Under the pieces are notes generated by a model. The model worked only from the letters and a program-made list of their open reading frames with translations. It did not search any database and had not been told where the DNA came from. This document shows positions 1 to 57,187 of a DNA stretch of 64,000 bases, one piece after another. Numbering within the stretch: the stretch's first letter is position 1; every line of letters begins with the position of its first letter. Location of the stretch: IMG/VR virus record IMGVR_UViG_3300047321_000238, positions 62,001-126,000 of that record; one strand, 5' to 3'. The position numbers and the translations under genes were made by a program.

Positions 1-242
1 TTGAAGACTCTCTATTAGCTGAAGTTGAATCAGTTAGCACTCCTGACACTATAAGTGATTCATTTGGATTAGATGACTTAGAAGGATTCAGTAACTCAAT
101 AATAGATTATTCTTGTTATGATGTTACTCCAGTTCAAGAAAACTATGATGAAAAACAATTCGTTGCAATTACAACAAACTACGATATTCCTCAAGTTGAC
201 ATGTGCAATGACGAAAACTATTTAAATGGTTTAACTCAATAA
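1..242 (+). CDS. 3' end of an acidic hypothetical protein (partial)
   Basis: Open frame from nt 3 (EDSLLAEVES...GLTQ) to TAA at 240-242, followed by a terminator. Confidence 0.7.
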   Translation, partial: EDSLLAEVESVSTPDTISDSFGLDDLEGFSNSIIDYSCYDVTPVQENYDEKQFVAITTNYDIPQVDMCNDENYLNGLTQ

Positions 243-1398: not shown

Positions 1399-1403
1399 TA
1401 TTG

Positions 1404-1906
1404 CCCCCTTCGGGGATAGATCAGTGCCATTCCTTCGGATAAATATAAATAAGCTCCCTCCGCTCGCAGTCCCTTCGGGAACAAATAAACTAACTTCGTT
1501 AGTAGAAATAAGCTTCGCAGACTAATCGTGCGGATTCTATGAGAGCTATATTGAAACTAAGTTCTTATTGAACTATTTAGTTCTCATAATAAATTCGCTA
1601 CACTCATAGTCTTAGTCATGCGTGTTATCTGAGATTATCCTTAATCCCAAATCTCATCTTATCCCAATAAACTCACTACGTTCGTAGTTTTAATCATGCG
1701 GATATCTTGAGACATTTATATGCTTACTCATAGTTATAAACTTACTTACGAGTGACATTATAAATTCAATTAGCTATTAATTAGCTACTACATACATACA
1801 ACAAGGGGGAAATAATAGGAGACTTGCGTTTAATCCATTTCTCAGGTTAAATCTATATGCTCTGTATGTATAAAATAAGCTACGCAGTTTAATCATGCGT
1901 ATTATT
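1404..1906. repeat. Cluster of TTC-loop mini inverted repeats and AAATAAGCT(T/A)CGCAG...ATC(A/G)TGCG repeats
   Basis: CCCC-TTC-GGGG, TCC-TTC-GGA, TCCC-TTC-GGGA, ACTAAC-TTC-GTTAGT; repeat copies at 1506 and 1873, partial copies at 1447 and 1681. Confidence 0.75.
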
Positions 1907-2180
1907 CGTGTAACTCTAATGCTGAAAATAGAGTGTAGACTTAGCAGGTTCTTCTATTGCTTGCTATATGTTGAACGTATAAATGGAATCCTTATATATT
2001 ATTTATGTCTGTAATAATATAAGAAGTTAGCCCAAGACATGTTGTATATATATGAGAGTGCACGCTTATGTATATATTCCTAATTAAATTATTAAATATG
2101 TATACATCCCTACTTACGAGTGAATGTATATATATAAGAATGATTTAAGCGAAAACGAAAAAATCAAAATTTGAAAGGAA

Positions 2181-3041: not shown

Positions 3042-3206
3042 ATGTTCAGAATAAAATATGTAGTAAGTGGTTTGGTTAAAGAACAATTATATGAAGACAC
3101 ATTCTATGCAGTCAGTTTAAGACAAGCATGGTATTACTTTGGTAAGAAGTACGGCTTCAATATTAGGGACTTTAAGAGACTGAATAGTGGGGGAATAGCA
3201 TCATGA
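3042..3206 (+). CDS. small hypothetical protein, 54 aa (not in ORF track)
   Basis: MFRIKYVVSG...GGIAS; ATGA overlap with rnhA start. Confidence 0.6.
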   Translation: MFRIKYVVSGLVKEQLYEDTFYAVSLRQAWYYFGKKYGFNIRDFKRLNSGGIAS

Positions 3207-3685
3207 AGAAACTTAATGTGTTCATAGATGGAGCATGTAAAGATGTAAAGAACAAAGAAAAAGCAATTGGTGGTTGGGGATACATAATCACTGATGAATA
3301 TTTTAATGTTATCAAACAAGATAATGGCAAAATAAGAGAAGGCATCCAAGATAGTAATCGTGCAGAACTTGAAGGACTGTATCAAGCATTACTTAAGATG
3401 AAGACGTTTAAAGGAAATAATAAGTTCCATATCTATACTGATTGTGAAAGCATAGCAGATAGTTTAAATGGATATTCAGAACGTAGAGCCAATAGAGATT
3501 ATTGGGATAATATAGAACCTATATGTAAAAGGTTAGCAGGACACTTTAGAATATCTCACATCGTAAGTCATCAAGTAAATGATAACGATGATAAATTTAT
3601 TGAGTATAATAATAAAGTAGACAAGCTAGCAAGAATTGGAGCAAATAGTCTAACTAAAGCACCAGTAACAAACATAGCAATATAA
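3203..3685 (+). CDS. rnhA: ribonuclease HI
   Basis: VFIDGAC, SNRAELEG, YTDCES, VSH, NKVDKLA = RNase HI catalytic D/E/D/H/D motifs. Confidence 0.9.
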   Translation: MKKLNVFIDGACKDVKNKEKAIGGWGYIITDEYFNVIKQDNGKIREGIQDSNRAELEGLYQALLKMKTFKGNNKFHIYTDCESIADSLNGYSERRANRDYWDNIEPICKRLAGHFRISHIVSHQVNDNDDKFIEYNNKVDKLARIGANSLTKAPVTNIAI

Positions 3686-3696: not shown

Positions 3697-4020
3697 ATGA
3701 AAGAGGTAATCATTATGAAACTAGGATTTAAATTAGGAAATATAGAATATAACGAAATCAAATTAAGCAATGTAGAATTAAACGTACAATTCTCAGCAGA
3801 AGAATTAGTAGCAGAATATGATTTATTAAAAAGAATAGCTAAAGAACTTCCAGAGATATGTACAGATTTAGCTAATGGAGCAGTAGCATTTGCAGAAATA
3901 GATAAAGCATTTACTAAGTATACAACTGCAGTAGTAGCAGAAGATTCAACAGAAGAAACAAAAACAACTGCAATGGATCTAGTTAAGTCAGCTATTAATA
4001 AAATCAATCAAGCAGTATAA
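3697..4020 (+). CDS. hypothetical protein
   Basis: ORF; likely start 3715 after GAGGT. Confidence 0.75.
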   Translation: MKEVIIMKLGFKLGNIEYNEIKLSNVELNVQFSAEELVAEYDLLKRIAKELPEICTDLANGAVAFAEIDKAFTKYTTAVVAEDSTEETKTTAMDLVKSAINKINQAV

Positions 4021-4050: not shown

Positions 4051-4875
4051 ATGTCAAAAATAGATATAGATATGAATTCAACAGTAAAAATAAACGGTGG
4101 AAAGTCTTTAAATATGGCAGAGTTTGCAGATAAGTTTGGAGTAGATTTAGCTAATCCTCAATTAGTAGTATCAACAGCTAATATATTAGAGAAACAAGGC
4201 AAGTTAATAGTAGTTGAAACTAAATCTAAAGAAGAACAAATCGTAGACCAAGCAATGGGACAAGAAGTATTCCAAAGTGTTGTAGAAAATTTAGATAATG
4301 AAGAACAAGCTTATAAAGAACAACTAAGAGAAGCTAAGAAAGCAGAATCAGATGTATTAAAAATAACATTAGCATTTATAACAACATTAGATGCAACAAA
4401 GTTTAATATGTGGTTAACTAGCTTAGGAGTAACTGAAGTATCTCAAATAATAAAGAATGGTTGTATTAAACTATTAATAGAAGATATAACTCCGCAAGAA
4501 TATACTAAGATATCAGCTAAGTATAAAGCAGAGAAAGCTATTAATGCAACAGTTAATACAACAAGTAAAGTAATGAATGGAACTACTAATGCTGTAAACT
4601 ATGGTTTAAGTGAAGTAGTCGCACCTGTAGCTAAAATAGCAGGAGAAGCTGGTATGAATTTAGGTAAAGGATTATTCCATACTCTAATTAAAACAGGAGC
4701 AGGTTTAATCAATAGTGGAGCTAAAGCAGTTACAGATACTAAAATAGCTTTAATGACAGATCCTGAATGTTTAAGAGCAACTAGTCAATTAATCGATGCA
4801 AAGAATAATATAACTAGAGGCGTTAATAAACAAATGAATAATAGAGGATTTGGATCAGGAATCGAAATACTATAA
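4051..4875 (+). CDS. hypothetical protein, 274 aa
   Basis: ORF with GAAGGAAG SD; Gly/Ala-rich C-terminal half. Confidence 0.8.
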   Translation: MSKIDIDMNSTVKINGGKSLNMAEFADKFGVDLANPQLVVSTANILEKQGKLIVVETKSKEEQIVDQAMGQEVFQSVVENLDNEEQAYKEQLREAKKAESDVLKITLAFITTLDATKFNMWLTSLGVTEVSQIIKNGCIKLLIEDITPQEYTKISAKYKAEKAINATVNTTSKVMNGTTNAVNYGLSEVVAPVAKIAGEAGMNLGKGLFHTLIKTGAGLINSGAKAVTDTKIALMTDPECLRATSQLIDAKNNITRGVNKQMNNRGFGSGIEIL

Positions 4876-4893
4876 TAGATAGGAGTTGTTGTA

Positions 4894-5007
4894 ATGGGAC
4901 AATTAATAGCTAAAGTACTATTTAATCAGAAGGTGATGAGCAGTATTGTTCCGCCTTCTCTACTTAGTAATTTAGGAAACATAATAACAAAAGCAGTATT
5001 AAAATAA
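4894..5007 (+). CDS. small hypothetical peptide, 37 aa
   Basis: AGGAG SD; MGQLIAKVLF...KAVLK. Confidence 0.45.
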   Translation: MGQLIAKVLFNQKVMSSIVPPSLLSNLGNIITKAVLK

Positions 5008-5022
5008 TAGGAGTGATATATA

Positions 5023-5259
5023 ATGTTAGAACATCAACCAATCTTGAGAGCATTAATAGAACAAGGATATAGTAGCAAGATGTTAGGTGCAGTTATTAAT
5101 GAGAAGACTCAAAGAGGAACTGCATTAATCAAACTAGACTCTATAGAAAAACCATTTAATATATACTGGAATAAACATAAATCACAATGGCAAGACGTAA
5201 AACCAGCAGAAGAAGTATCACCTGCAATAGTAGAAAGATACTACGCATCAGCAATATAA
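5023..5259 (+). CDS. hypothetical protein
   Basis: AGGAGTG SD, ORF track. Confidence 0.75.
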   Translation: MLEHQPILRALIEQGYSSKMLGAVINEKTQRGTALIKLDSIEKPFNIYWNKHKSQWQDVKPAEEVSPAIVERYYASAI

Positions 5260-5320
5260 GATTAAAATAGCTATTGGTAATCTACTTAATCTAATATATA
5301 AATAATAAAATCCTATATAT

Positions 5321-5355
5321 AAATAAGCTTCGCAGTTTTAATCATGCGTATTATT
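5321..5355. repeat. Third full copy of the AAATAAGCTTCGCAGTTTTAATCATGCGTATTATT element
   Basis: Near-identical to 1873-1906. Confidence 0.8.
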
Positions 5356-5800
5356 TGTATATAGGTTGGACCCTTAATCCATGAAAAGACGATTGGAGCA
5401 TCTACGTATGTTGGGTATCGCAAAGTTTTCATTAATCCATCCCGTTCCTTATAGTATTATGCAGGATTTAGAATTCATTCTTGCATTCCTACTATAGGGA
5501 ATACCCCTAAAAAGACTCAATCTTGCAAGAAAAAGAAAACCAACTTTCAGAATTACTATTATTGTGGAATAGATTATAATATATGCAAATATATTTTTAA
5601 GCTATCTTAACACAATTATGGTTAATTTTTTTCAGAGTTGGACACTAGTGTAATATATATAACACCAATTAACAGCTAACGCAGTTATGGAAATAACACT
5701 TTGATATAGCTTAAAGTATATTTGCTGTTAATACACAATTCGTACTTACGAGTGCCGTAGATGCATATGCGACATAAAGTTAAGATGGATTTGTGCTTCC

Positions 5801-5988
5801 GAGTGCGAGCGTTAGCGAGCACGTATAATTAAATAGCGTTAGCGTCAATTATATAATAGCGTTAGCGTCAAAATTAAATAAAGCGTTAGCGTAGATTTAT
5901 AAATAGATATAATCTTCTATAGTATACCCATACTATTATGAAGTATATCGTCCTACAATTCCATTCAGTGACAGTTATAGCGTTAGCG
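5801..5988. repeat. Five direct repeats of AGCGTTAGCG in AT-rich spacers (iteron-like)
   Basis: Copies at 5808, 5835, 5858, 5882, 5979. Confidence 0.85.
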
Positions 5989-6351
5989 TTTAATAACAAG
6001 CGTAGAATCGATTGTATCATCTATTAAGAGTAGCCATGTGTATACATACTACTAAACTTTAATAGATGCAACGTTGAACACGTAGTGCGAAACACAATAA
6101 AATTATAATAATTTCTCTATACCTACCTAGCAGAATGTAAGTGATGTGGTAGTAGAGGATTAGGAGTCATATCTCCGTTTTAAAGAAATGGCACTCGTAG
6201 ACCTGAACCAAGACGGTTTTGGGACGTAATCGGTGCTTTCACGTTATAATGGATATAAGCGTAGTGAGTAGTCTAAAAACGAACGGATTACTATTACAGT
6301 AGTATATATACTTATATACACACATGGAATAAAAATAAAGGAGATTATAAT

Positions 6352-6582
6352 ATGCCTAATTATAATAGAATAAAACAAGAATTAATTAATAAAAGAATTG
6401 AAGAAAGATATGATGGAGTAGATATGTTAACATCACGTCTTACTAATGGAGATATAGCTATTAAATGTAATGATATAGATAATAAGTGTAACCATCCTAA
6501 TGGTTGTTGTATATTAAGTTTACAAGAATTTCAAGAATGGAATTGTAAATGTGCATATCAAAATAAGTATTACTTTAGGTAA
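6352..6582 (+). CDS. Cys-containing hypothetical protein
   Basis: AAGGAG SD; six Cys in the C-terminal half. Confidence 0.7.
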   Translation: MPNYNRIKQELINKRIEERYDGVDMLTSRLTNGDIAIKCNDIDNKCNHPNGCCILSLQEFQEWNCKCAYQNKYYFR

Positions 6583-6599
6583 GAAAGGATATATAATAG

Positions 6600-6932
6600 A
6601 TGGAAGTATTAAAGTATATTAATGATACGTTAGTATCATATACATTAGCTGAACTATATGATAATAGAATAGGAATATCTGTAAGTAACGTAGAAGAGTT
6701 TATAGACATAATCGATAAATTAGATGCAACAGGTTTAGTGTATATGCCTACCGATGTAAAACGAGATAAGGTAGCATTGTACAATAGAGGTACAAGTAAA
6801 AATAGTTGTATATTAATAGAAAGAAGACCTGACCTAGGTAAATGTGAATATATATTAAGGTATTATTCAGAAGACTATGTAACTATGTATGCTGGCACTA
6901 TAAAGAAGTATAGTGAGGTGACATTAGTATAA
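6600..6932 (+). CDS. tag-array paralog 1 (MEVLKYIN)
   Basis: Shared N-terminal peptide and YT(L/I)..L...I.I.V..EEF core. Confidence 0.85.
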   Translation: MEVLKYINDTLVSYTLAELYDNRIGISVSNVEEFIDIIDKLDATGLVYMPTDVKRDKVALYNRGTSKNSCILIERRPDLGKCEYILRYYSEDYVTMYAGTIKKYSEVTLV

Positions 6933-7252
6933 TGGAGTTGTTAAAGCATATTAATGATATGGCAAATACGTATACTATAAGTAAGCTGTTAAATACAAAC
7001 GCTATAGTACAGTGTGATAGTAAAGAAGAGTTTATGCAGTTAATATATAAGATAAACTGTACATCGTATCTACATACAACCCTTAGTGGTAGTACATGGG
7101 ATATTTATAATAACCAGGATAGATATAATGGAAGTATGGCAATATACTTTAACAGTAGACATCTAGAGTTTTGTTACGTAGATTATTATAAAACATATAG
7201 ACGTAAGAACCCTAAGTATAAGTATAGTGAAGTAAATATAGTAACTATATAG
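6932..7252 (+). CDS. tag-array paralog 2 (MELLKHIN)
   Basis: TAATG overlap; family core and FC..DYY motif. Confidence 0.85.
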   Translation: MELLKHINDMANTYTISKLLNTNAIVQCDSKEEFMQLIYKINCTSYLHTTLSGSTWDIYNNQDRYNGSMAIYFNSRHLEFCYVDYYKTYRRKNPKYKYSEVNIVTI

Positions 7253-7260
7253 AGTATGCA

Positions 7261-7293
7261 GAGTTTTTCTTCTGCACGCGAACATATGTTTAT
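7261..7293 (+). promoter_or_regulatory. Repeated intergenic motif TTTTTC-T(C/T)TGCACGC-(G/A)AACATATGTT-TAT, copy 1
   Basis: Matches 9793-9826 and partly 9444-9462; contains the palindrome AACATATGTT. Confidence 0.6.
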
Positions 7294-7319
7294 TATATGA
7301 AAGGAGATTAAGCAAGTCT

Positions 7320-7667
7320 ATGAGTATAGAGTTATTAGATTATATAAATAAGAATAGTAAAAAGTCTTATACTATACAACAGATGATAGATGATAAGATA
7401 GCAATTCAAGTATGTAGTAGAGAAGAGTTGCAAAATCTTATAGATATAAGAAGTAGTCATGGTTGTATTGGGTGTACAGTAGAATCATGGGATACGTATG
7501 TAATAAAATATAACAAAAAGAGATATAATGGTCGGATGTGTTTAGCATTTCAAAGACCAGGATTTCTTGATTTCTGTGATACAGGATATTATCTAAACCA
7601 AGGATATACTATAGTGCCTTATACAAGTCTAGTTATAATAGATAGTGATAAGGTGGTGTTAATATAA
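7320..7667 (+). CDS. tag-array paralog 3 (MSIELLDYIN)
   Basis: KIAIQVCSREE, FCDTGYYLNQGY. Confidence 0.85.
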   Translation: MSIELLDYINKNSKKSYTIQQMIDDKIAIQVCSREELQNLIDIRSSHGCIGCTVESWDTYVIKYNKKRYNGRMCLAFQRPGFLDFCDTGYYLNQGYTIVPYTSLVIIDSDKVVLI

Positions 7668-7984
7668 TGGAAGTATTAAGTCATATTAATAATATACAAA
7701 GGTTTAGTATGTCAGACTTTATAGATAAAGGATATGTAATAAAGGTATGTCATAGAGCTGGACTAGAAGCTATAGTAGAGTATTTAGATAATCATGGTGT
7801 AGAAGTTAACGATGATATACGTGGAGCTGATGATAGAAGATGTGAATACTTATGTTTAAGACTAGGAGGATGGACAGATAAGAGTGGTAACATAACAGGT
7901 TATTGTGCATGGCAAGCAAACTATGAACACTATAAGAGTAGAGGATGTACTATGTACGATTATGATGAGGTGGTGTTAGTATAA
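7667..7984 (+). CDS. tag-array paralog 4 (MEVLSHIN)
   Basis: TAATG overlap; family pattern. Confidence 0.85.
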   Translation: MEVLSHINNIQRFSMSDFIDKGYVIKVCHRAGLEAIVEYLDNHGVEVNDDIRGADDRRCEYLCLRLGGWTDKSGNITGYCAWQANYEHYKSRGCTMYDYDEVVLV

Positions 7985-7985
7985 T

Positions 7986-8318
7986 ATGGAGTTATTAAAA
8001 GAAGTAAATGAATTTAATAAGTATAGAATACGAGATATAATACGTAATAGCATGGATATATTAATACATACACCTAAGGAAGAAGACTTAATTATATTAT
8101 ATAACAAGTTAATTGAATTAGGATATATAATAAGTGATCACATGTTGCATATATATAGTTCGTATAAAGAAGAGACATGTATAAGATTCTATAAGTATAC
8201 TAGTCAAAGTAGTGTAGCAAATGAATTAGGAATGAGTTATGCTGATAAACCATGGTATATCGAGAATGAAAAACAAATGAAGATAATAAACATGGGGGAC
8301 ATAGTATGGAAGTATTAA
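7986..8318 (+). CDS. tag-array paralog 5 (MELLKEVN)
   Basis: IHTPKEE, KEETCI, YADKPWY. Confidence 0.85.
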   Translation: MELLKEVNEFNKYRIRDIIRNSMDILIHTPKEEDLIILYNKLIELGYIISDHMLHIYSSYKEETCIRFYKYTSQSSVANELGMSYADKPWYIENEKQMKIINMGDIVWKY

Positions 8319-8620
8319 GATATATTAATGATGTAGTATATGGTATGTATACTATAGAAGAATTAATAAATAAGAAGATAGCAGTACATGTACCTACAAA
8401 AGAAAAATTTAATAATATGCAAGATATGCTTATATTATTATATGGCAATAAAATAAAAACATTATCTTATGATAAAATAGGTAGGTATGCAAAGTTAATG
8501 TGTATTAACGTAGAGAGTAGTACAGGACCATATCAATATGACATGGTTATAAGTTATTGCGATAAACAATGGTATCTGGATAATGGTTATACTGTTATAA
8601 GTATGGATAGTATAAGATGA
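8306..8620 (+). CDS. tag-array paralog 6 (MEVLRYIN)
   Basis: KIAVHVPTKE, YCDKQWYLDNGY. Confidence 0.85.
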   Translation: MEVLRYINDVVYGMYTIEELINKKIAVHVPTKEKFNNMQDMLILLYGNKIKTLSYDKIGRYAKLMCINVESSTGPYQYDMVISYCDKQWYLDNGYTVISMDSIR

Positions 8621-8808
8621 GTAAAGAATTATTAAGTTATATAATAGTAATGTTTATTACGGGTTTCTTAATAGGAATAATGGGAAACCTAATGGGCTCA
8701 CCAAGTAAAAATAATATATTTATAGATGCTATATTATTTGGAATATTCATGATATTTTATCCATTTTATATTATTATATATGAAATAAGAAACAATAGAA
8801 AGAAGTGA
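8617..8808 (+). CDS. small membrane protein with tag-like start (MSKELLSYI)
   Basis: Two hydrophobic segments; ATGA overlap. Confidence 0.7.
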   Translation: MSKELLSYIIVMFITGFLIGIMGNLMGSPSKNNIFIDAILFGIFMIFYPFYIIIYEIRNNRKK

Positions 8809-8815
8809 AAATATC

Positions 8816-9127
8816 ATGGAGATATTAAGTTATATAAATGATATAGCCTTTAACACGTATACTATAAAACAGTTAATAGGTAATAAGATAGCAGTGCATG
8901 TACCCACGCTTAAAGAATTCAAAGATATGCAAGAGATAGTTAAAGCACACAATAAAGATGTATATATAATGGATGATAGTATATATAATTGTATGAAAGA
9001 GGAGACATGTCTTAATATAGAAAATTGGAGCGGAGATTGTATATGTGATATACAAATAGAATATTGCGATAAACAATGGTATATAGATAATGGTTATAAG
9101 ATTATAAGTATGGAGGATATAAGATGA
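8816..9127 (+). CDS. tag-array paralog 7 (MEILSYIN)
   Basis: KIAVHVPTLKE, KEETCL, YCDKQWYIDNGY. Confidence 0.85.
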   Translation: MEILSYINDIAFNTYTIKQLIGNKIAVHVPTLKEFKDMQEIVKAHNKDVYIMDDSIYNCMKEETCLNIENWSGDCICDIQIEYCDKQWYIDNGYKIISMEDIR

Positions 9128-9438
9128 GTGTAGAACTATTAAATTATATAAACAAAGAAATGTTTAAGATTATAATAACAGTAGATGAACTAGTTAATAA
9201 TGGAGTAGTTATACATGTAAATAATAGAGAAGAACAGGAAGAGTTTTTCACCGCAGTATGTAATGTGGATATACATGTACCTGCTGATACTAGAATACAT
9301 TCATATAAAACACATGGAGATAAGCTGTTACACTTAATACAAAATCATAATGGTTTATATAGAGTAATGTATGGCACTAAGATGTCATTAGGTAAGTATA
9401 GAGTATTAGAGTATAAAGATATAAGTATAGTTAAGTAA
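9124..9438 (+). CDS. tag-array paralog 8 (MSVELLNYIN)
   Basis: VVIHVNNREE core. Confidence 0.85.
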   Translation: MSVELLNYINKEMFKIIITVDELVNNGVVIHVNNREEQEEFFTAVCNVDIHVPADTRIHSYKTHGDKLLHLIQNHNGLYRVMYGTKMSLGKYRVLEYKDISIVK

Positions 9439-9443
9439 ACAAC

Positions 9444-9462
9444 GGTTTTTTCTTTGCACGCG
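9444..9462 (+). promoter_or_regulatory. TTTGCACGC motif, copy 2 (truncated)
   Basis: GGTTTTTTCTTTGCACGCG. Confidence 0.5.
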
Positions 9463-9483
9463 TAATAAGAAGGAGTGAACGTA

Positions 9484-9783
9484 GTGATTGAGTTATTAAA
9501 GTATATTAACAATGACTTCGTAAAAGAAGAAACTGTTGAAGCTATTAATAAAAGAAATAAGTTATTCAACGAACATGTATTAACATTAAGAAAAGATATA
9601 GAAGAACTTAATGATAGAATAGAACTAGATAATAAAAGAAAAAGTAAAGCATTATTTATTATAGTATCTTCTACTATAGTTAATCTTATAATACAATTAA
9701 TATCTATAAGTCTTTATATTAAAGTATCATCAGCTATAGTATATGTATTGCTATTACAATTAGTTATATGGAAGAAAGATTAA
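9484..9783 (+). CDS. coiled-coil + transmembrane protein with tag (MIELLKYIN)
   Basis: GTG start at 9484, 9 nt after AAGGAG; unrelated body. Confidence 0.75.
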   Translation: MIELLKYINNDFVKEETVEAINKRNKLFNEHVLTLRKDIEELNDRIELDNKRKSKALFIIVSSTIVNLIIQLISISLYIKVSSAIVYVLLLQLVIWKKD

Positions 9784-9792
9784 GTAGAAAAA

Positions 9793-9826
9793 GGTTTTTC
9801 TTTGCACGCAAACATATGTTTATATT
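9793..9826 (+). promoter_or_regulatory. TTTGCACGC-AAACATATGTT motif, copy 3
   Basis: Matches 7261-7293. Confidence 0.6.
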
Positions 9827-9844
9827 AAGAAGGAGTGATAAGTC

Positions 9845-10312
9845 ATGGAAGAATTGTTAGAATTATTGGGAGATAGAAGAATACCTAAGTATGAGGAGAC
9901 GACAGCATTTAATAACATACCTATTACAGATGAGTATGTAAAACATCAAATTATAAGTGAAGATAAAAAAGAAGTGAAGGCAATATTAAAAAGAATAAGG
10001 ACTAGCGGATTTCATTGCAATAGTACGAACAATTTAATAACTGTCATATTAGAGAACAAAGCTCTCTTAGATAAAATTAGTTTAGTAAAGGATGGTAGTT
10101 ATTTAAATACAAAGATACTTTTAAAACGTAATAGCAAACCATATATACTTATATATAGTGGAATTAAAACTGTATTAGGTGATAAAGTATTCGATTTGAA
10201 ATTTGATTATAGTGAAATAGAAATGTTAAATCTTATTACTGATAGAAGTGAAAGAGTATATATTAATATAAGAGATTATATAGATAGAGATAGATATAGA
10301 TGGAACTATTAA
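9845..10312 (+). CDS. hypothetical protein (MEELLELL)
   Basis: AAGGAGTG SD. Confidence 0.8.
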   Translation: MEELLELLGDRRIPKYEETTAFNNIPITDEYVKHQIISEDKKEVKAILKRIRTSGFHCNSTNNLITVILENKALLDKISLVKDGSYLNTKILLKRNSKPYILIYSGIKTVLGDKVFDLKFDYSEIEMLNLITDRSERVYINIRDYIDRDRYRWNY

Positions 10313-10629
10313 ATTATATAAACAACGTGTTAAATAAGTATAACTTTGATTATCTATATGATAATAAAGTAGCAATAAGAGTACCAACAGCAGACGATTA
10401 TTATATATTAGAGAAGATGATAAATGATTATTGTAAGAGAAAATATATATCAGTAAGATTATTACCATTCTTAAGGAATAGTAATTATATAAAAATACAT
10501 GCTACATGTATTAATATAGGACCAGAAACTATAACAAATCATTATGATATAAATATAAACTATTGTGATCAAGAATATTATATACAACAAGGATATACTA
10601 TAGTTAATATATCTGACTGTTGTATATAG
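10300..10629 (+). CDS. tag-array paralog 9 (MELLNYIN)
   Basis: KVAIRVPT, ATCI, YCDQEYYIQQGY. Confidence 0.85.
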   Translation: MELLNYINNVLNKYNFDYLYDNKVAIRVPTADDYYILEKMINDYCKRKYISVRLLPFLRNSNYIKIHATCINIGPETITNHYDININYCDQEYYIQQGYTIVNISDCCI

Positions 10630-10641
10630 GAGAGTAGTATA

Positions 10642-10854
10642 ATGGAACTATTAAAGTATATAAACAATTATAAACACAAGATGATGTGTGGCAGTACTAG
10701 TAGACAAAAAAGAGGATGTGACAATATCGATATAAAAGCATGTTGTATAACATGTAATAAGAGAGACGATTGTTACTTTGAATGTGCAGGCTCACAGACA
10801 GAAAGACATTATCGAAATATAGATGAGCCATGTGATAAAGGAGTAGTACTATGA
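10642..10854 (+). CDS. Cys-rich protein with tag (MELLKYIN)
   Basis: CCxxCx5Cx3C pattern. Confidence 0.8.
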   Translation: MELLKYINNYKHKMMCGSTSRQKRGCDNIDIKACCITCNKRDDCYFECAGSQTERHYRNIDEPCDKGVVL

Positions 10855-10982
10855 TGGAATTATTACAAGCAGTTAATAAAATGAATATGTATACTTTAAC
10901 AGATGTAGTCTATGCATTTACAAGAGGAAAGAAAATAGCAATAGAAATAAAAGATATTATAATAAAGAAGGAGTATTTATGA
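10851..10982 (+). CDS. truncated tag-array paralog, 43 aa (not in ORF track)
   Basis: MMELLQAVNKMNMYTLTDVVYAFTRGKKIAIEIKD...; AAGGAG SD; overlaps both neighbours. Confidence 0.65.
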   Translation: MMELLQAVNKMNMYTLTDVVYAFTRGKKIAIEIKDIIIKKEYL

Positions 10983-11347
10983 CCGAACTATTAAGTATGA
11001 TTAATAATTATTCTATAGGATATAGTTTAAACGATTTATATAATAAACATATAATAATTAGAATATTAAACAAAAAAGATTTATGTGATTTCATTGAAAT
11101 TTCTAATTATAATAATACAGTTAGAACCTTTAATGCAGAAAAAGTATGGAATAAATATGTAGAACCACTTAATAATTGTAATAAAATTATATGCATAGAA
11201 TTAGAAGTAAATGACGAAGAAGATAATTATGATTTTATGTTTACATTTGGAAGTATAAGTTATTATACTGATCCAATACTACATCGTGAAAATAAATATG
11301 AAATAGTAGATTATCATAAAGATATAATAAATAATTGGGAGATATAA
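10979..11347 (+). CDS. tag-array paralog 10 (MTELLSMIN)
   Basis: Family pattern. Confidence 0.85.
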   Translation: MTELLSMINNYSIGYSLNDLYNKHIIIRILNKKDLCDFIEISNYNNTVRTFNAEKVWNKYVEPLNNCNKIICIELEVNDEEDNYDFMFTFGSISYYTDPILHRENKYEIVDYHKDIINNWEI

Positions 11348-11350
11348 TTT

Positions 11351-11698
11351 ATGATTGAATTATTAAGTTTTGTTAATGATGAAACAAACATAAAAGAAAC
11401 AGTATATGTAGACGACATAGCTGGAAACAAAATAACATTAGAATTTTCTACTAAAGAAAGTTATATGATATTTTGTAAAGCTATGGACGAAACATATGAT
11501 ACTTATACTGAATATACAAAGAATGATGCATGGGAAGACTATATAGAAGATGAAGAGCAGAACAAAGATTTTAAAGGTAAGCTTGGTTTGAATCTACATG
11601 ATAATAAAAAAGGTTGGAACTATTGTGAAATTGATTGGTATAAAGATAATGGCTATAAAGTATATAAGTACGATGATATTATATTAAAGTACAATTAA
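11351..11698 (+). CDS. tag-array paralog 11 (MIELLSFVN)
   Basis: YCEIDWYKDNGY. Confidence 0.85.
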   Translation: MIELLSFVNDETNIKETVYVDDIAGNKITLEFSTKESYMIFCKAMDETYDTYTEYTKNDAWEDYIEDEEQNKDFKGKLGLNLHDNKKGWNYCEIDWYKDNGYKVYKYDDIILKYN

Positions 11699-11715
11699 AA
11701 AGGAAATGAAGAATA

Positions 11716-12042
11716 ATGAGGGAATTATTAAAACATATACAAGAGAATCAATATAAAATAGAAGATATTATAAAAGATAATGTAGCGTTGTATATTGATA
11801 ATAGAAAAGATTTAGATACTATAATAGAAGTAGCAAATAGACATAATATATTTATTGGGCCATTTATAAGAACATCATTAACGGATTCATATTGTAAAAA
11901 AGGAATCTTTATAAAGATAATACACATTAAAGAAAATGATTATTATGTGAAAGGATATAAATATAGATTAGGATGGAATTTCGATGATAATGATAAATCA
12001 CTCTTAACTGTATATAGTAGAGAGGATTATATATTAGTATAA
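11716..12042 (+). CDS. tag-array paralog 12 (MRELLKHIQ)
   Basis: YKIEDII..VALYI core. Confidence 0.8.
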   Translation: MRELLKHIQENQYKIEDIIKDNVALYIDNRKDLDTIIEVANRHNIFIGPFIRTSLTDSYCKKGIFIKIIHIKENDYYVKGYKYRLGWNFDDNDKSLLTVYSREDYILV

Positions 12043-53086: not shown

Positions 53087-53173
53087 GGAAGAGTGGCCGA
53101 GATGGTTGATGGCGGCAGACTGTAAATCTGTTCTGTAAAAAGCACGTTGGTTCGAATCCAACCTTTTCCACCA
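53087..53173 (+). tRNA. tRNA-Tyr(GTA)
   Basis: Cloverleaf, long variable arm, CCA. Confidence 0.95.
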
Positions 53174-53412
53174 AAGTCTAAGGTTAAGATATATTCACTC
53201 AATTGACTTGAATTGAATAAAGTTACACATTAGGTTAGTAATACTTTGATTAAAGATATATTCATCAGAATATTGATAGTCAATTATAACTATACGTAAT
53301 ATGGATGTTTCTGAACTTCAGCCCCTGTGGTACATAAATATGTGAGAAATATCGGAGTATTCTAATTAGGAATATGTGTCTAGTAGTAGGTCGGGACTAG
53401 ACAAAATAATAT

Positions 53413-53488
53413 GGATAGATAGCTCAGATGGTAGAGCAGTGGATTGAAGATCCGCGTGTCCAAGGTTCGATTCCTTGTCTGTCCACCA
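53413..53488 (+). tRNA. tRNA-Phe(GAA)
   Basis: Cloverleaf, 76 nt, CCA. Confidence 0.95.
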
Positions 53489-53557
53489 GTAGGTTTTTGT
53501 TAGCTTTTGCCGTAGAACTCCTAGAGAGAGTCAAATCAAAAACTATCTCCACCATAT

Positions 53558-53634
53558 GGCTCTGTAGCTCAGTTGGAAGAGCATCCGTATTATTAAACGG
53601 AGTGTCGGAGGTTCAATTCCTCCCAAAGTCTCCA
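53558..53634 (+). tRNA. tRNA-like gene with 8-nt anticodon loop ATTATTAA (Asn-like?)
   Basis: D and T arms and CCA intact; TCCGT/ACGGA stem. Confidence 0.7.
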
Positions 53635-53697
53635 TTCATCCTTTTTATATTTTTATATTGTAGATACTCTCTATTATTGGGAGGGTATTTGCAACAT

Positions 53698-53772
53698 GGC
53701 TCATTAGTATAGCGGTTAGTACACTGCCCTGTCACGGCAGAAGCGGGAGTTCGATTCTCCCATAAGTCGCCA
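53698..53772 (+). tRNA. tRNA-Asp(GTC)
   Basis: Cloverleaf, CCA, one acceptor mismatch. Confidence 0.9.
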
Positions 53773-53831
53773 TAGGATTTTCTTTTGTCAGTTTCTTTCT
53801 AGATCAAAAAAGTAAACTGTAAAACCTATAT

Positions 53832-53920
53832 GGAGCAATACTCAAGTGGCTTAAGAGTCCAGTCTTGAAAACTGGTAGGCTGTAACAGGTGCGTAGGTTC
53901 GAATCCTACTTGCTCCGCCA
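53832..53920 (+). tRNA. tRNA-Ser(TGA)
   Basis: Cloverleaf, long variable arm, GCCA. Confidence 0.95.
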
Positions 53921-53986
53921 AGGCGTTAAGCCTATGTTTTCTTTAGACGTAAGTTTCTTTTCTCAAAAGCAAACACGTTGAATTAT

Positions 53987-54063
53987 GGGTTCTTAGCTCA
54001 GATGGCTAGAGCACTGGCCTCCAAATCCAGGTGTCCTAGGTTCGATTCCTAGAGGGCTCGCCA
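53987..54063 (+). tRNA. tRNA-Trp(CCA)
   Basis: Loop CT-CCA-AA, G73, CCA. Confidence 0.9.
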
Positions 54064-54140
54064 ATAAAGAGTAAAGTTGTACCGCTCTAATGTTAGTTAT
54101 TAGTGTACATCGCAAAGGAGAATGACTAACAAAACAATAT

Positions 54141-54231
54141 GGAACTGTACTCAAGAGGTTTAAGAGGAGCCCTTGCTAAGGGTTTAGACGAATTTATTCG
54201 TGCTAGGGTTCGAATCCCTACGATTCCGCCA
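54141..54231 (+). tRNA. tRNA-Ser(GCT)
   Basis: Cloverleaf, long variable arm, GCCA. Confidence 0.9.
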
Positions 54232-54570
54232 AGGGTAGTTCAACACACTTCTAGTAGAGTTTCTACAAGTGGCAAGAGTAAATGTATGCAGTTAACTTAT
54301 AAGAACATTGCATAGCAGTATAGAACCAGTGGTAATGATCCACCGATACTGCAAAAGGTTTTAATGCTTAGTAGGAACAACTAAGTAGTGTACGCTATCT
54401 ACAAAAGAGTATCCTCATGGTGCTGATACTTGAAAGATGGATAAGGGTGAACCACTTGAAACCCGATAGCAAAAGACCTAATAAGTAGCAAAATTAGGTT
54501 TAAAACTCTAAATATAATTAGGGATTAAAGCAATTACAAATGCAAGTTTAGGACTTTTATAATAGTCCTT
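54232..54570 (+). ncRNA. candidate structured ncRNA (~340 nt)
   Basis: Many nested stems (GCAGTAT/ATACTGC, GCTATC/GATAGC, ACCTAAT/ATTAGGT); no ORF. Confidence 0.45.
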
Positions 54571-54575
54571 TATAT

Positions 54576-54651
54576 GCTGAATTAGCACAATTGGCAGTGC
54601 ATCTGACTTGTAATCAGAAGGTTAAGAGTTCGAATCTCTTATTCAGCTCCA
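54576..54651 (+). tRNA. tRNA-Thr(TGT)
   Basis: Perfect cloverleaf, CCA. Confidence 0.95.
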
Positions 54652-54780
54652 AAACCAGTATTCGGTGGCAATCTAATTGCACTAGCTGACGAGGTTTGTC
54701 ACACAGAGATAGACGTTAATTCTCGGAGTCTTTATTAGGAAGACATCTAGACAGTATGGTAGGGACTGTCCAACCGATAT

Positions 54781-54855
54781 AGCATTGTTGAGGAGTGGTT
54801 TCTCGCTAGCTCAAAAAGCTAGAGCACACTGGTTCGATTCCAGTCTTTGCGACCA
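54781..54855 (+). tRNA. degenerate tRNA-like gene (loop TCAAAAA)
   Basis: D, anticodon and T stems paired, ACCA end; acceptor has 3 mismatches; no U33. Confidence 0.6.
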
Positions 54856-54993
54856 TAATCTATGTAAGTCTTCACAGATTCTAATTGTGTGAAGCCGAAA
54901 CTTATATCAACGCGGTAAGGATAAAGTATTAGATAAACCATCCTATTAGCAGAGATTACGGGTGCAGAAGTTCGTAGTTATAGCATCCACCAA

Positions 54994-55069
54994 CAGGATA
55001 TAGGACAGTTGGTAGTCCGCCACATTTGGGATGTGGAGATCCTAGGTTCGAGTCCTAGTATCCTGACCA
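54994..55069 (+). tRNA. tRNA-Pro(TGG)
   Basis: C1-G72, A73, TT-TGG-GA loop, CCA. Confidence 0.95.
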
Positions 55070-55305
55070 AGGTCGTCTGTAGTTTAAGCGAATTCTTTAC
55101 TAACTAGCTTAACAAAAAACTTACTGTTGATTCAAAGCATGCCTGCGATCATGGCCAATGATTTGTTAGTTTTAATCATAAGCTGAATCAAAGTGTTCTT
55201 AGGAAGTACAATATGCATATCGTTCAAAAGCGAAAGATTTCATAGATGGCGTTTATAATAAGAACAACAATAAAGTAATGAGCCACCTGCCATTACTTTA
55301 AATAT

Positions 55306-55383
55306 CAGGATGTAGCTCAGTTGGTAGAGTGCTGGCACGATTATAGCCAGAAGTCGTAGGTTCAATCCCTACTGTCCTGACCA
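55306..55383 (+). tRNA. tRNA-Pro-like body with 9-nt anticodon loop ACGATTATA
   Basis: CAGGATG/TGTCCTG-ACCA; CTGGC/GCCAG stem. Confidence 0.8.
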
Positions 55384-55390
55384 AAGTGTG

Positions 55391-55471
55391 GGGAGCACAT
55401 ATTGCGGAAAGCTTTGTAACCAAAAGTAAGGAATGTTGTTCTGGCATAAAGTTCCTTTGCTCCCATGGTTA
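55391..55471 (+). ncRNA. novel ~74-nt branched RNA, copy 1, plus ATGGTTA tail
   Basis: GGGAGCA/TGCTCCC closing stem; covaries with copy 2. Confidence 0.75.
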
Positions 55472-55667
55472 TTTACTTGGTAGCTATACCAAGACTATAA
55501 AATAGTCGTATCTTAGGAACGTAAGCACTAAGCGTCATCAGGCTAAAGACTAATAATTAATTTATTAGAGATGAGAACCCTGACCAATGTATTGAAAGCT
55601 TAACGGATGTTGGAAACGTTAGTTTTTAGGGTGATAACCTTGAGTAGTGTCTAAATAATCATAATAT

Positions 55668-55746
55668 CAGGATGTAGCTCAGTTGGTAGAGCACTGGCAT
55701 TAATAGGAGCCAGAGGTCGTAGGTTTGAGTCCTACTGTCCTGACCA
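55668..55746 (+). tRNA. tRNA-Pro-like body with 10-nt anticodon loop ATTAATAGGA
   Basis: Same acceptor and anticodon stems as 55306. Confidence 0.8.
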
Positions 55747-55754
55747 TATCTGTC

Positions 55755-55836
55755 GAGAGTACAGTTTGCAGAAAAGCTTAAGAACCTAAAGCAGGGAATG
55801 TTGTTCTGGTATAAAGTTCCCTTACTCTCATGGTTA
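55755..55836 (+). ncRNA. novel ~74-nt branched RNA, copy 2, plus ATGGTTA tail
   Basis: GAGAGTA/TACTCTC closing stem. Confidence 0.75.
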
Positions 55837-55840
55837 ACAA

Positions 55841-55915
55841 TGGGGAATAGTCAAGCGGAAAGACAGTGGATTTTGATTCCACGATGCGAAGGTTCGAACC
55901 CTTCTTCCTCAGCCA
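55841..55915 (+). tRNA. tRNA-Gln(TTG)
   Basis: U1-A72, G73, TT-TTG-AT loop, CCA. Confidence 0.95.
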
Positions 55916-56010
55916 CCTACAATAGTAGGAGTTTATTATAAGTCCGATTTCAATCTTTTATTAGCTATTAATGGCTCGCCAAAGTAATCATTAATAGCTA
56001 ATATAATATC

Positions 56011-56086
56011 ATGAAGGTAGGATAGTTGGTAGTCCACCAGTTTGTGGCACTGGTTTACGCGAGTTCGAGTCTCGTCCTTCATTCCA
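56011..56086 (+). tRNA. tRNA-His(GTG), atypical acceptor end
   Basis: TT-GTG-GC loop; A1-U72, U73, no genomic G-1. Confidence 0.85.
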
Positions 56087-56087
56087 T

Positions 56088-56164
56088 GGCTTCATAGCTC
56101 AGTTGGCTAGAGCAATCGGTTCATACCCGAAAGATCATTGGTTCAAGTCCAATTGAAGCCACCA
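56088..56164 (+). tRNA. tRNA-Met(CAT), elongator type
   Basis: GGTTCATACCCG arm as in Firmicute elongator Met; CCA. Confidence 0.9.
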
Positions 56165-56990: not shown

Positions 56991-56996
56991 AAATAT

Positions 56997-57091: not shown

Positions 57092-57092
57092 T

Positions 57093-57173: not shown

Positions 57174-57187
57174 AATAAATATAATAT

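What the first reader, a model, noticed from the sequence alone, without database searches (positions are those of the whole stretch)
5801..5991. Iteron-like AGCGTTAGCG array that doubles as GNNA mini-hairpins
Seen: five exact copies (start-to-start spacing 27, 23, 24, 97 nt) in A/T-only spacers within a 1.1-kb non-coding region. Each contains GC-GTTA-GC. The first is embedded in GTGC-GA-GC-GTTA-GC-GA-GCAC, which can fold with tandem sheared G.A pairs. Known: d(GCGNNAGC) hairpins are very stable, and one occurs in the phage G4 complementary-strand origin. Inference: a replication origin, packaging/terminus signal or protein-binding array just before the tag-gene array.
Basis: partly seen in the sequence, partly recalled or inferred. 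Interest (0 to 1): 0.6.

Follow-up and report, generated by a model that had tools for sequence, protein, structure and literature searches.

The report
Conserved one-strand mini-hairpin array
A 248-kb uncultured phage and all 12 fetched relatives keep, on one DNA strand only, a row of tiny very stable hairpins of the kind that marks primer-start sites in small phages; it probably marks where copying of single-stranded DNA begins, though a role in RNA is not excluded.

Summary
AGCGTTAGCG occurs five times (window 5808, 5835, 5858, 5882, 5979), all on the + strand, against 0.01 expected, and nowhere else in the 247,883-bp phage genome. The spacers are A/T-rich, not A/T-only.

In 12 relatives, whose neighbouring gene is 40-84% identical in protein, the same non-coding gap holds 2-5 + strand copies of GCGTTAGC, GCGTCAGC or GCGAAGC. 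That is 48 + strand copies against 4 on the - strand, with 1.2 expected per strand.

The first copy always caps a 4-7 bp stem that covaries, and different stems occur within one genome. So a folded single strand is selected, not a fixed double-stranded binding site.

The sequence rules are those of DNA mini-hairpins, and the 8-mer is the one at the primase-dependent origins of phages St-1 and alpha3. The phage encodes a DnaG-type primase, DnaE and an RNase HI.

Best reading (about 0.4): a strand-specific single-stranded-DNA initiation signal inside an origin-like control region. Close rival (about 0.3): hairpins acting in a non-coding transcript. Classical iterons, a packaging end and N4-type promoters are disfavoured. 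GC skew is uninformative here.

The same capped hairpin is enriched in intergenic DNA of unrelated viral contigs.

The parts
5803..5822 (+). Long hairpin (copy 1): GTGC / GA / GC-GTTA-GC / GA / GCAC. It is a 4-bp outer stem, tandem G.A mismatches, and a mini-hairpin cap.
   Evidence: Predicted as the minimum-energy fold for DNA and RNA. The outer stem covaries in 17 homologous hairpins from 13 genomes: 85% of cells paired against 71% in shuffles (0 of 500), and 6 of 9 pairs carry changes on both sides. A covariance model finds it only once in the 248-kb genome.
5835..5844 (+). Mini-hairpin copy 2 (A-GC-GTTA-GC-G)
   Evidence: Conserved in position in L136-L140 and L143.
5858..5867 (+). Mini-hairpin copy 3
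5882..5891 (+). Mini-hairpin copy 4 (present only in the window and its closest relative L136)
5979..5988 (+). Distal mini-hairpin copy 5. Relatives have a distal module here, either a second long hairpin plus a simple copy or a single copy, 190-350 nt after the proximal array.
5892..5978 (.). A/T-rich stretch (26% G+C) between the proximal and distal copies, with an inverted repeat at 5906-5925 / 5930-5949.
5743..5806 (+). CGAGTG(A/C)C repeats (TACTTACGAGTGCC at 5743-5756; CGAGTGC at 5800-5806, which forms the 5' arm of the long hairpin). Across relatives these sit on an exact 17-nt lattice.
   Evidence: In 13 genomes the motif starts at -7, -24, -41, -58, -75 and -92 relative to the hairpin core. 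The same motif recurs at window 1743 and 2111, at genome 185,468 and 185,504, and inverted at window 6190.
5586..5724 (.). Inverted repeat unique in the genome, AGCTTAA(N3-4)TATATTTG. The arms lie at 5586-5603 (- strand) and 5708-5724 (+ strand).
   Evidence: It is the only pair in the genome. Both arms are conserved in the closer relatives.
5669..5731 (+). Stem TTAACAGC (5669-5676) / GCTGTTAA (5724-5731) with one covarying pair among relatives. The inverted 8-mer core GCTAACGC (5675-5682) lies in its loop.
   Evidence: by eye on alignment A3; not formally counted.
5364..5422 (+). Conserved three-way-junction element with an invariant loop.
   Evidence: 7 of 15 predicted pairs carry compensatory changes, and there are conserved G.U pairs on the + strand. 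Rfam has no match.
5260..6351 (.). The whole conserved non-coding control region that holds the array.
   Evidence: No conserved ORF. It is as well or better conserved than the flanking genes. Against L136 the array is 0.91 and the 5361-5640 block 0.93 identical, compared with 0.86 for the 274-aa gene. A soil relative keeps the region at 94-96% against 84-91% in the genes.
3203..3685 (+). RNase HI gene, syntenic with the region in 10 of the 12 relatives. Context only, possibly functionally linked.
   Evidence: PF00075, E 1.2e-12. PF00075 was called on the syntenic gene in 9 of the 10 relatives fetched (none in L144).
4051..4875 (+). 274-aa protein of unknown function, the marker gene used to find relatives.
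   Evidence: 72 homologues. No Pfam or PHROG match. The model has pLDDT 67.5 and no PDB fold match at E <= 0.001.

Best explanation
The five AGCGTTAGCG copies are this phage's version of a conserved array of DNA-type mini-hairpins that lies on one strand only. Each unit is two G-C pairs closed by a G(N)NA loop with a sheared G.A, flanked by an A.G mismatch.

The first unit caps a longer stem. Upstream lies a 17-nt lattice of CGAGTG(A/C)C repeats. Downstream lies an A/T-rich stretch and a distal copy. Everything sits in a 1.1-kb conserved non-coding region.

Proposed mechanism. The array acts when the + strand is single-stranded. The + strand is the non-template strand for rightward transcription and the lagging-strand template for a rightward fork. 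It would be exposed by an R-loop or by local unwinding. The hairpins then snap shut, keep single-strand-binding protein off, hold the bubble open, and offer a start site for primer synthesis. The primer would be made by the phage DnaG-type primase, or by host RNA polymerase as at plasmid single-strand origins. In short, it is a single-strand initiation signal belonging to a replication origin.

Shown: the array exists, is unique in the genome, is conserved, is strand-specific, has a covarying stem, obeys the mini-hairpin sequence rules, and the phage carries primase, DnaE and RNase HI genes.

Inferred: that the + strand is exposed, that single-strand-binding protein is excluded, that a primase or RNA polymerase is recruited, and that the region is an origin.
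For: Statistics and uniqueness. Five copies against 0.01 expected, and none elsewhere in 248 kb.

Conservation. All 12 relatives fetched, whose neighbouring gene is 40-84% identical in protein, keep 2-5 + strand copies in the same gap. The totals are 48 on the + strand and 4 on the - strand, with 1.2 expected per strand.

The core follows DNA mini-hairpin rules, not RNA rules:
- The core varies only within the mini-hairpin set: loops TT 37, TC 7, and the GAA tri-loop 3.
- 8-mer and 7-mer cores co-occur in one genome (L142, L145).
- Only GC/GC stems carry the GTTA or GTCA loops.
- In RNA the third loop base should be a purine, and tri-loops are poor.

The structure is selected. The outer stem of the long hairpin covaries, with 0 of 500 shuffles as good and slid controls at 19-48% paired. 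Different stems occur within one genome.

Literature (PMC13037366):
- d(GCGTTAGC) melts at 69.5 C, whereas r(GCGAAAGC) melts at only 39 C.
- GCGTTAGC caps hairpin I of the DnaG-dependent complementary-strand origins of St-1 and alpha3.
- Mini-hairpins bind single-strand-binding protein poorly.

Gene content. The phage encodes a DnaG-type primase with zinc ribbon, catalytic core and Toprim domains, plus DnaE, gyrase and ligase. An RNase HI gene lies near the region in the window and 10 of the 12 relatives, with two genes (window 3697-4020 and 4051-4875) between it and the gap.

The architecture resembles origins that combine repeats, an A/T-rich stretch and single-strand initiation hairpins.

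The region is at least as conserved as the flanking genes.
Against: - There is no direct evidence of initiation or of single-stranded DNA here. Only contigs were available, with no read ends or depth profile.
- The gap is probably transcribed rightward. A three-way-junction element 380 nt upstream keeps G.U pairs on the + strand. Two relatives carry a hammerhead-like core in the gap. The neighbouring gap holds UUCG-loop hairpins, an RNA hallmark. The hairpins will therefore also exist as RNA.
- The long hairpin is also stable as RNA, at -9.9 kcal/mol.
- Nearest-neighbour models give the short copies only -0.8 kcal/mol as DNA. Their stability rests on published measurements of oligonucleotides.
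- No E. coli-type CTG start site follows the long hairpin.
- No DnaA boxes lie in the gap, and no initiator gene was identified.
- In unrelated viral contigs the same capped hairpin is mostly co-oriented with genes and often sits about 23 nt after a stop codon, which also fits an RNA 3'-end role.
Confidence: 0.4

Rival explanations
1. The hairpins act in RNA. The gap is transcribed rightward into a structured non-coding RNA or long leader. The long GUUA-capped hairpin and its short copies then serve as protein-binding sites, processing or stability elements, or an antitermination signal ahead of the long rightward gene block.
For: - All copies are in the sense orientation of the flanking genes.
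- The gap holds other covarying structures: a three-way junction with conserved G.U pairs and hammerhead-like cores in the L006 and L007 gaps.
- UUCG-loop hairpins lie in the neighbouring gap.
- The long hairpin folds at -9.9 kcal/mol as RNA, z -2.3.
- In unrelated contigs the capped hairpin is intergenic in 46% of cases, and mostly co-oriented with the flanking genes (15 against 6), often just after a stop codon.
Against: - The short copies have only two base pairs. The RNA form of such a hairpin melts near 39 C, against about 70-76 C for DNA.
- The loops are GUUA or GUCA, with a pyrimidine at the third position, so they are not GNRA. They interchange with a GAA tri-loop, which is typical of DNA mini-hairpins.
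- The inner two pairs never covary, although the outer stem does.
- No T-run follows any hairpin, so they are not intrinsic terminators.
- Rfam has no match.
- No RNA data were available.
Confidence: 0.3
2. The repeats are double-stranded DNA binding sites (iterons or operators) for a phage initiator, regulator or small terminase subunit. The hairpin potential is incidental.
For: - The copies are direct repeats in one orientation, with 19-30 bp spacing, next to an A/T-rich stretch.
- The 10-mer AGCGTTAGCG is more conserved than the 8-mer hairpin core alone.
- The upstream CGAGTG(A/C)C repeats look iteron-like.
Against: - 8-mer and 7-mer cores, and quite different outer stems, co-occur in one genome.
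- The core is unchanged across relatives whose proteins are only 40% identical, whereas iterons normally co-evolve with their initiator.
- The spacing is not fixed.
- No DNA-binding protein was identified next to the region.
Confidence: 0.12
3. The array marks a packaging site or a physical genome end, for example a terminase recognition array or nuclease-resistant hairpin-forming ends.
For: - It is a unique site in the genome.
- It lies in a long non-coding region just before a block of small early-type genes.
- Mini-hairpins resist exonucleases.
- The record's 127-bp end repeat is only an assembly overlap, so the true ends are unknown.
Against: - No contig of the 12 relatives ends at the array. 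Five end 0.1-0.7 kb into the downstream gene array, which is a 12-member paralogue family and so a likely assembly break.
- The source-run contig crosses the site without a break.
- No terminase gene was seen in this early-gene arm; the arm was sampled, not fully annotated.
Confidence: 0.07
4. The hairpins are N4-type single-stranded promoters for a hairpin-recognising RNA polymerase.
For: - N4 early promoters are DNA hairpins capped by GCGGAGC or GCGAAGC-type mini-hairpins.
- The phage has three giant proteins of 2,066-3,081 aa with unknown function.
Against: - No T7-like polymerase domain was found in the genome, although that search's controls did not ring either.
- No virion-polymerase family matched the giant proteins.
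- The loops are mostly four bases, not three.
- The hairpins lie on the non-template strand for the downstream genes, so transcription from them would run leftward.
- The phage carries its own sigma factor, which points to use of the host polymerase.
Confidence: 0.05

Closest known systems
Hairpin I of the DnaG-dependent complementary-strand origins of microviruses St-1 and alpha3 (G4 type)
   Same: The same 8-mer GCGTTAGC caps a longer stem on the strand that serves as template. A DnaG-type primase is available. The element is orientation-specific (PMC13037366).
   Different: Those are single hairpins in small single-stranded DNA genomes, with an E. coli-type CTG start site. Here there is an array of 3-5 units in a 248-kb double-stranded phage. 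It has tandem G.A flanks and a 17-nt repeat lattice, and no CTG follows the hairpin. Priming has not been tested.
DNA mini-hairpins d(GCGNNAGC) / d(GCGNAGC) (Hirao and co-workers)
   Same: The sequence rules are obeyed in all 48 copies: GC/GC stem, G...A loop ends, and interchange of four-base and three-base loops.
   Different: That is a physico-chemical class, not a biological system. Stability in this flanking context and formation in vivo are untested.
Single-strand initiation signals next to iterons in plasmid origins (RSF1010 oriV ssiA/ssiB; pAMbeta1 ssiA after a transcription-primed origin)
   Same: They show the same combination of direct repeats, an A/T-rich stretch and hairpin signals read on single-stranded DNA. 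ssiA of RSF1010 contains a CCGAAGG mini-hairpin. A possible link to RNase H and transcription is shared with R-loop origins.
   Different: RSF1010 has signals on both strands and a dedicated RepB' primase. Here all units are on one strand and no initiator is known. The comparison with pAMbeta1 rests on my own knowledge and was not tested.
ssoA-type single-strand origins of rolling-circle plasmids of Gram-positive bacteria
   Same: The conserved CS-6 hexamer is TAGCGT. The window's unit A-TAGCGT-TAGCGT reads as two tandem CS-6-like hexamers. The host is probably Gram-positive. Both are orientation-specific.
   Different: No RSB element is present. No 130-160-nt imperfect palindrome surrounds the hexamers, and they are not in the loop of a long hairpin. 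A six-base match is weak evidence.
Phage N4 early promoters (hairpins recognised by the virion RNA polymerase)
   Same: A mini-hairpin-capped DNA hairpin acts as a polymerase signal.
   Different: N4 uses a three-base loop, the template strand and a giant T7-like virion polymerase. None of these was found here.

Membership tests
DNA mini-hairpin (GCGNNAGC / GCGNAGC) | Two G-C pairs in the order GC...GC around a loop that begins with G and ends with A | tested here: met
   All five window copies and 48 copies in 13 genomes fit. Only GC/GC stems carry the GTTA or GTCA loops.
DNA mini-hairpin (GCGNNAGC / GCGNAGC) | Four-base and three-base loop forms are interchangeable | tested here: met
   GCGTTAGC, GCGTCAGC and GCGAAGC replace one another among relatives and within L142 and L145.
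DNA mini-hairpin (GCGNNAGC / GCGNAGC) | Extraordinary thermal stability and nuclease resistance as single-stranded DNA | not testable with these tools
   The published Tm is 69.5 C for d(GCGTTAGC). Nearest-neighbour folding gives only -0.8 kcal/mol, and the review says such models fail for this motif.
G4/St-1-type primase-dependent single-strand origin | A mini-hairpin caps a longer hairpin on the template strand | tested here: met
   The hairpin is at window 5803-5822, and its outer stem covaries.
G4/St-1-type primase-dependent single-strand origin | Primase start trinucleotide (CTG for E. coli DnaG) just 3' of the hairpin | tested here: not met
   No CTG occurs in the 28 bases after the hairpin. 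The trinucleotide preferred by this phage's primase is unknown.
G4/St-1-type primase-dependent single-strand origin | A DnaG-type primase is available | tested here: met
   Genome 154,202-155,344 encodes a protein with zinc ribbon, catalytic core and Toprim domains.
G4/St-1-type primase-dependent single-strand origin | Primer synthesis starts at the site on single-stranded DNA coated with single-strand-binding protein | not testable with these tools
   This needs biochemistry or a single-strand-initiation cloning assay.
ssoA single-strand origin | CS-6 hexamer TAGCGT in the terminal loop of a long imperfect palindrome | tested here: inconclusive
   TAGCGT occurs twice per unit (consensus). It is not in the loop of a 130-160-nt palindrome.
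ssoA single-strand origin | RSB element | tested here: not met
   No match with up to 3 mismatches anywhere in the window.
Iterons (double-stranded initiator-binding repeats) | One fixed repeat sequence and length within a genome, at regular spacing | tested here: not met
   8-mer and 7-mer cores and different flanks co-occur within one genome, and spacing ranges from 19 to 30.
Iterons (double-stranded initiator-binding repeats) | An initiator gene next to the repeats | tested here: inconclusive
   The neighbouring proteins have no recognisable DNA-binding family or fold.
N4-type hairpin promoter | A giant virion RNA polymerase with a T7-like core | tested here: not met
   PF00940 was not found, although the controls did not ring either. 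The giant proteins match no polymerase PHROG.
N4-type hairpin promoter | 5-7 bp stem, three-base loop, on the template strand of the genes served | tested here: not met
   44 of 48 loops are four-base GTTA or GTCA loops. The hairpins lie on the non-template strand of the downstream genes.
Intrinsic transcription terminator | G+C-rich hairpin followed by a T-run | tested here: not met
   No terminator-like site was found in 4800-6800.
Known RNA families (Rfam 15) | Match to a covariance model | tested here: not met
   Nothing at gathering score, and nothing better than E 8.8 in 5200-6400. Nothing was found at the hairpins of 17 other contigs.

The most novel reading that the evidence does not exclude
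Arrays of DNA mini-hairpins are an unrecognised, widespread class of strand-specific cis-acting signal in double-stranded DNA phages. They would mark where single-stranded DNA is exposed and primed, at an R-loop or primase-entry origin. This jumbo-phage family would be the clearest case, combining a covarying long hairpin, a 17-nt repeat lattice and a linked RNase HI gene. The CGA-GCGTTAGC-GAG-capped hairpins and GAGCG(N)NAGCGAG clusters seen in unrelated viral contigs would be members of the same class.
Probability: 0.25. Interest if true: 0.8.

Novelty: new variant of a known kind. Interest (0 to 1): 0.65.

Why it matters
- Replication origins and other cis-acting sites of large uncultured phages are almost wholly unknown. 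Sequence features that point to them are scarce, and GC skew fails here.
- If the array is a single-strand initiation signal, the old G4/St-1 mini-hairpin principle extends from 5-kb single-stranded phages to 250-kb double-stranded ones.
- It would also give a simple, searchable signature for such sites: GC-G(N)NA-GC units on one strand, with A.G flanks.
- The same capped hairpin is intergenic in 46% of unrelated viral contigs that carry it, against 10% for a reversed control. The motif may therefore be general and worth a family description.
- If it acts in RNA instead, it defines a new hairpin motif and a large structured non-coding region in a new jumbo-phage family.

Tried and rejected
- GC skew as an origin test. 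Bulk skew flips at about 53 kb and 185 kb with gene orientation, but four-fold-site skew is about zero everywhere, so it says nothing about replication.
- DNA search of cultured phages: no match in near or distant mode. The neighbouring protein has no match in cultured phages either.
- Rfam: nothing at the array.
- Terminator scan: none found.
- Sigma-70 promoter scan: no more sites than in shuffles.
- DnaA boxes: none in the gap.
- RSB of ssoA: absent.
- Retron or reverse-transcription idea: no reverse transcriptase in the genome.
- N4-like or T7-like polymerase: not found.
- The 274-aa neighbouring protein: no Pfam or PHROG match, a moderate model (pLDDT 67.5) and no PDB fold match.
- Reads: only Logan contigs were available, with no read starts, no local depth and no RNA run.
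- Groups of IMG/VR hits to the 14-mer without flanking stems: the two groups checked (L017, L059) lie inside ORFs and are coding coincidences, and overall 56 of the 104 contexts are coding.
- A Bacteroidota-type promoter reading of the TATATTTG motif was dropped. The genes have AGGAG ribosome-binding sites and the endolysin has choline-binding repeats, which point to a Gram-positive host.
- Literature search for the extended motif found nothing relevant.

Full report
**1. The observation**

The window is bases 62,001-126,000 of a 247,883-bp IMG/VR virus record. Its 127-bp end repeat is an assembly overlap.

AGCGTTAGCG occurs at 5808, 5835, 5858, 5882 and 5979, all on the + strand. Shuffles expect 0.01, and the motif occurs nowhere else in the genome on either strand.

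Copy 1 lies in GTGC-GA-GCGTTAGC-GA-GCAC (5803-5822). This is the minimum-energy fold as DNA and as RNA.

The region 5260-6351 has no conserved ORF. The spacers are A/T-rich but not A/T-only.

**2. The organism**

- The genome is about 30% G+C.
- Genes run leftward from 0 to 52.9 kb and from 185.5 to 247.8 kb, and rightward from 53.4 to 185 kb.
- It encodes DnaE, gyrase A and B, a sigma factor, NrdD, an NAD-dependent ligase and UvrD.
- It also encodes a DnaG-type primase and a DnaB_C-like protein, an RNase HI and a tRNA array.
- An endolysin with choline-binding repeats and AGGAG ribosome-binding sites point to a Gram-positive host.
- The source run is a rhizosphere metagenome.
- No cultured relative exists in the phage collection. 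DnaE is only 32% identical to those of Bacillus and Moorella phages.

**3. Conservation in relatives**

The 274-aa protein upstream (4051-4875) has 72 homologues. I fetched 12 syntenic loci with 40-84% protein identity.

Every one keeps the order: the 274-aa gene (preceded by an RNase HI gene in 10 of the 12), a 1.0-1.9-kb non-coding gap, then small genes. In 9 of the 12 one to three short ORFs also lie between the 274-aa gene and the gap.

Every gap holds 2-5 + strand copies of GCGTTAGC, GCGTCAGC or GCGAAGC, 19-30 nt apart, often with a distal copy 190-350 nt further on.

The totals in 19.8 kb are 48 on the + strand and 4 on the - strand, with 1.2 expected per strand. The base before the core is A in 45 of 48 copies, and the base after it is G in 42 of 48.

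The region is conserved at least as well as the neighbouring genes:
- Against the closest relative, the array is 91% identical, compared with 86% for the 274-aa gene and 72-75% for the small genes downstream.
- A soil relative keeps 5364-6314 at 94-96%, compared with 84-91% in the flanking genes.

**4. Structure, not sequence**

In 17 long hairpins from the 13 genomes the outer stem differs but stays complementary. Examples are GTGC/GCAC, GAGC/GCTC, GGGC/GCCC, TGCC/GGCA, AAAGCC/GGCTTT, TATGAGC/GCTCATA, ATATGC/GCATAT and CAATGC/GCATTG.

- 85% of cells pair, against 71% in shuffles (0 of 500 as high).
- Six of nine pairs have changes on both sides.
- Slid controls pair at only 19-48%.
- Different stems occur within one genome (L138, L139, L142, L145). 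A single sequence-specific duplex-binding protein cannot explain them.
- A covariance model finds the long hairpin once in the 248-kb genome and once or twice per relative.

**5. DNA or RNA?**

The inner core never covaries. Only GC/GC stems carry the GTTA or GTCA loops, and the four-base loop interchanges with a GAA tri-loop. These are the published rules for DNA mini-hairpins.

From the review PMC13037366:
- d(GCGTTAGC) melts at 69.5 C, and r(GCGAAAGC) at 39 C.
- GCGTTAGC is the cap of hairpin I in the primase-dependent origins of St-1 and alpha3.
- Mini-hairpins bind single-strand-binding protein poorly.
- N4 promoters and RSF1010 ssiA also use mini-hairpins.

The unit also reads as two tandem TAGCGT hexamers. 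TAGCGT is the CS-6 consensus of plasmid ssoA origins. However, the RSB element is absent.

The gap is nevertheless probably transcribed rightward:
- A three-way-junction element at 5364-5422 has 7 of 15 compensatory pairs and conserved G.U pairs on the + strand.
- L006 and L007 carry a hammerhead-like core in their gaps.
- The neighbouring gap has UUCG-loop hairpins.

An RNA role therefore stays a close rival.

**6. Architecture**

- Upstream of the long hairpin, CGAGTG(A/C)C repeats sit on an exact 17-nt lattice (-7, -24, -41, -58, -75, -92). The last one forms the 5' arm of the hairpin.
- The same motif occurs in the gap at window 1400-2180 and at the convergent gene junction near 185.5 kb.
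- Further upstream lies an inverted repeat that is unique in the genome.
- Between the proximal and distal copies lies a stretch of 26% G+C.
- There are no DnaA boxes in the gap.
- GC skew cannot locate an origin, because four-fold-site skew is about zero.

**7. Beyond this family**

The 14-mer CGAGCGTTAGCGAG hits more than 115 stretches of IMG/VR. Table: the real 14-mer against its reversed control.

| Motif | Distinct contexts | Intergenic | Three or more further complementary flanking pairs |
|---|---|---|---|
| CGAGCGTTAGCGAG | 104 | 48 | 16 (1.6 expected) |
| Reversed 14-mer (control) | 106 | 11 | 3 |

Several unrelated contigs show clusters of GAGCG(N)NAGCGAG units. I found no paper describing this.

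**8. Verdict**

The finding is real and unusual. The best reading is a strand-specific single-stranded-DNA signal, a single-strand initiation site in an origin-like region (about 0.4). RNA-level hairpins are second (about 0.3). Duplex iterons (0.12), a packaging end (0.07) and N4-type promoters (0.05) follow.

Noticed in passing
window 5364-5422 (also L136-L140, L143, L007): A conserved element of about 60 nt forms a three-way junction with an invariant 12-nt loop. 7 of 15 pairs are compensatory, and G.U pairs are conserved on the + strand. Rfam has no match. It is a candidate new small structured RNA.
   Followed up: partly
L006 10926-10980, L007 10958-11012; L006 1500-1558: Rfam calls a type III hammerhead in L006 at 1500-1558. 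The non-coding gaps of L006 and L007 hold sequences with the same architecture (GUC site, CUGAUGA, GAAAC, three stems), although Rfam did not list them at E <= 1. The window has none.
   Followed up: partly
window 1404-1480: Three hairpins with C-TTCG-G loops (UUCG type, an RNA hallmark) lie directly after the stop codon of the 366-aa gene. The same is seen in relative L137.
   Followed up: no
window 1449, 1508, 1875, 5323: A module ATAAGCT...CGCAG plus a hairpin with a TAATC-type loop occurs four times, all on the + strand, and only in the two non-coding gaps. Three of the four modules (window 1508, 1875, 5323) contain a mini-hairpin (GCGAAGC or GCGTAGC) on the - strand.
   Followed up: partly
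window 1743, 2111, 5743, 5800, 6190(-); genome 185,468 and 185,504: The motif TACTTACGAGTG(A/C)C recurs in three non-coding places, including two direct copies at the convergent junction of the two gene arms. In relatives it forms a strict 17-nt lattice before the long hairpin. Some copies resemble SP6/T7-type promoter cores (GTGACACTA).
   Followed up: partly
window 5586-5603 (-) and 5708-5724 (+): An inverted repeat AGCTTAA(N3-4)TATATTTG, unique in the genome, has arms about 105 bp apart and is conserved in the closer relatives.
   Followed up: partly
window 6600-12042: Twelve of the 17 small ORFs after the gap are paralogues of one 103-122-aa family with no Pfam or PHROG match. Five of the 12 relatives' contigs end 0.1-0.7 kb into this array, which suggests assembly breaks at repeats or a hypervariable region.
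   Followed up: partly
window 53087-57952: A tRNA array of 16-19 genes. ARAGORN reports two with odd anticodon loops, a two-base 'at' at 53558 and a four-base 'aata' at 55668.
   Followed up: no
IMG/VR loci L013, L034, L039, L043, L062, L066, L075, L085, L091, L103, L118, L121: Unrelated viral contigs (21-69% G+C) carry hairpins capped by CGA-GCGTTAGC-GAG, or clusters of GAGCG(N)NAGCGAG units, in intergenic DNA. In a 719-kb contig of 21% G+C the hairpin recurs upstream of genes on the opposite strand.
   Followed up: partly
genome 38-25050 (- strand) and 57224-62242 (+ strand): Four giant ORFs of 3,081, 2,867, 2,066 and 1,672 aa have almost no family matches. The exception is one lysis-type PHROG and DUF6046 in the largest.
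   Followed up: partly
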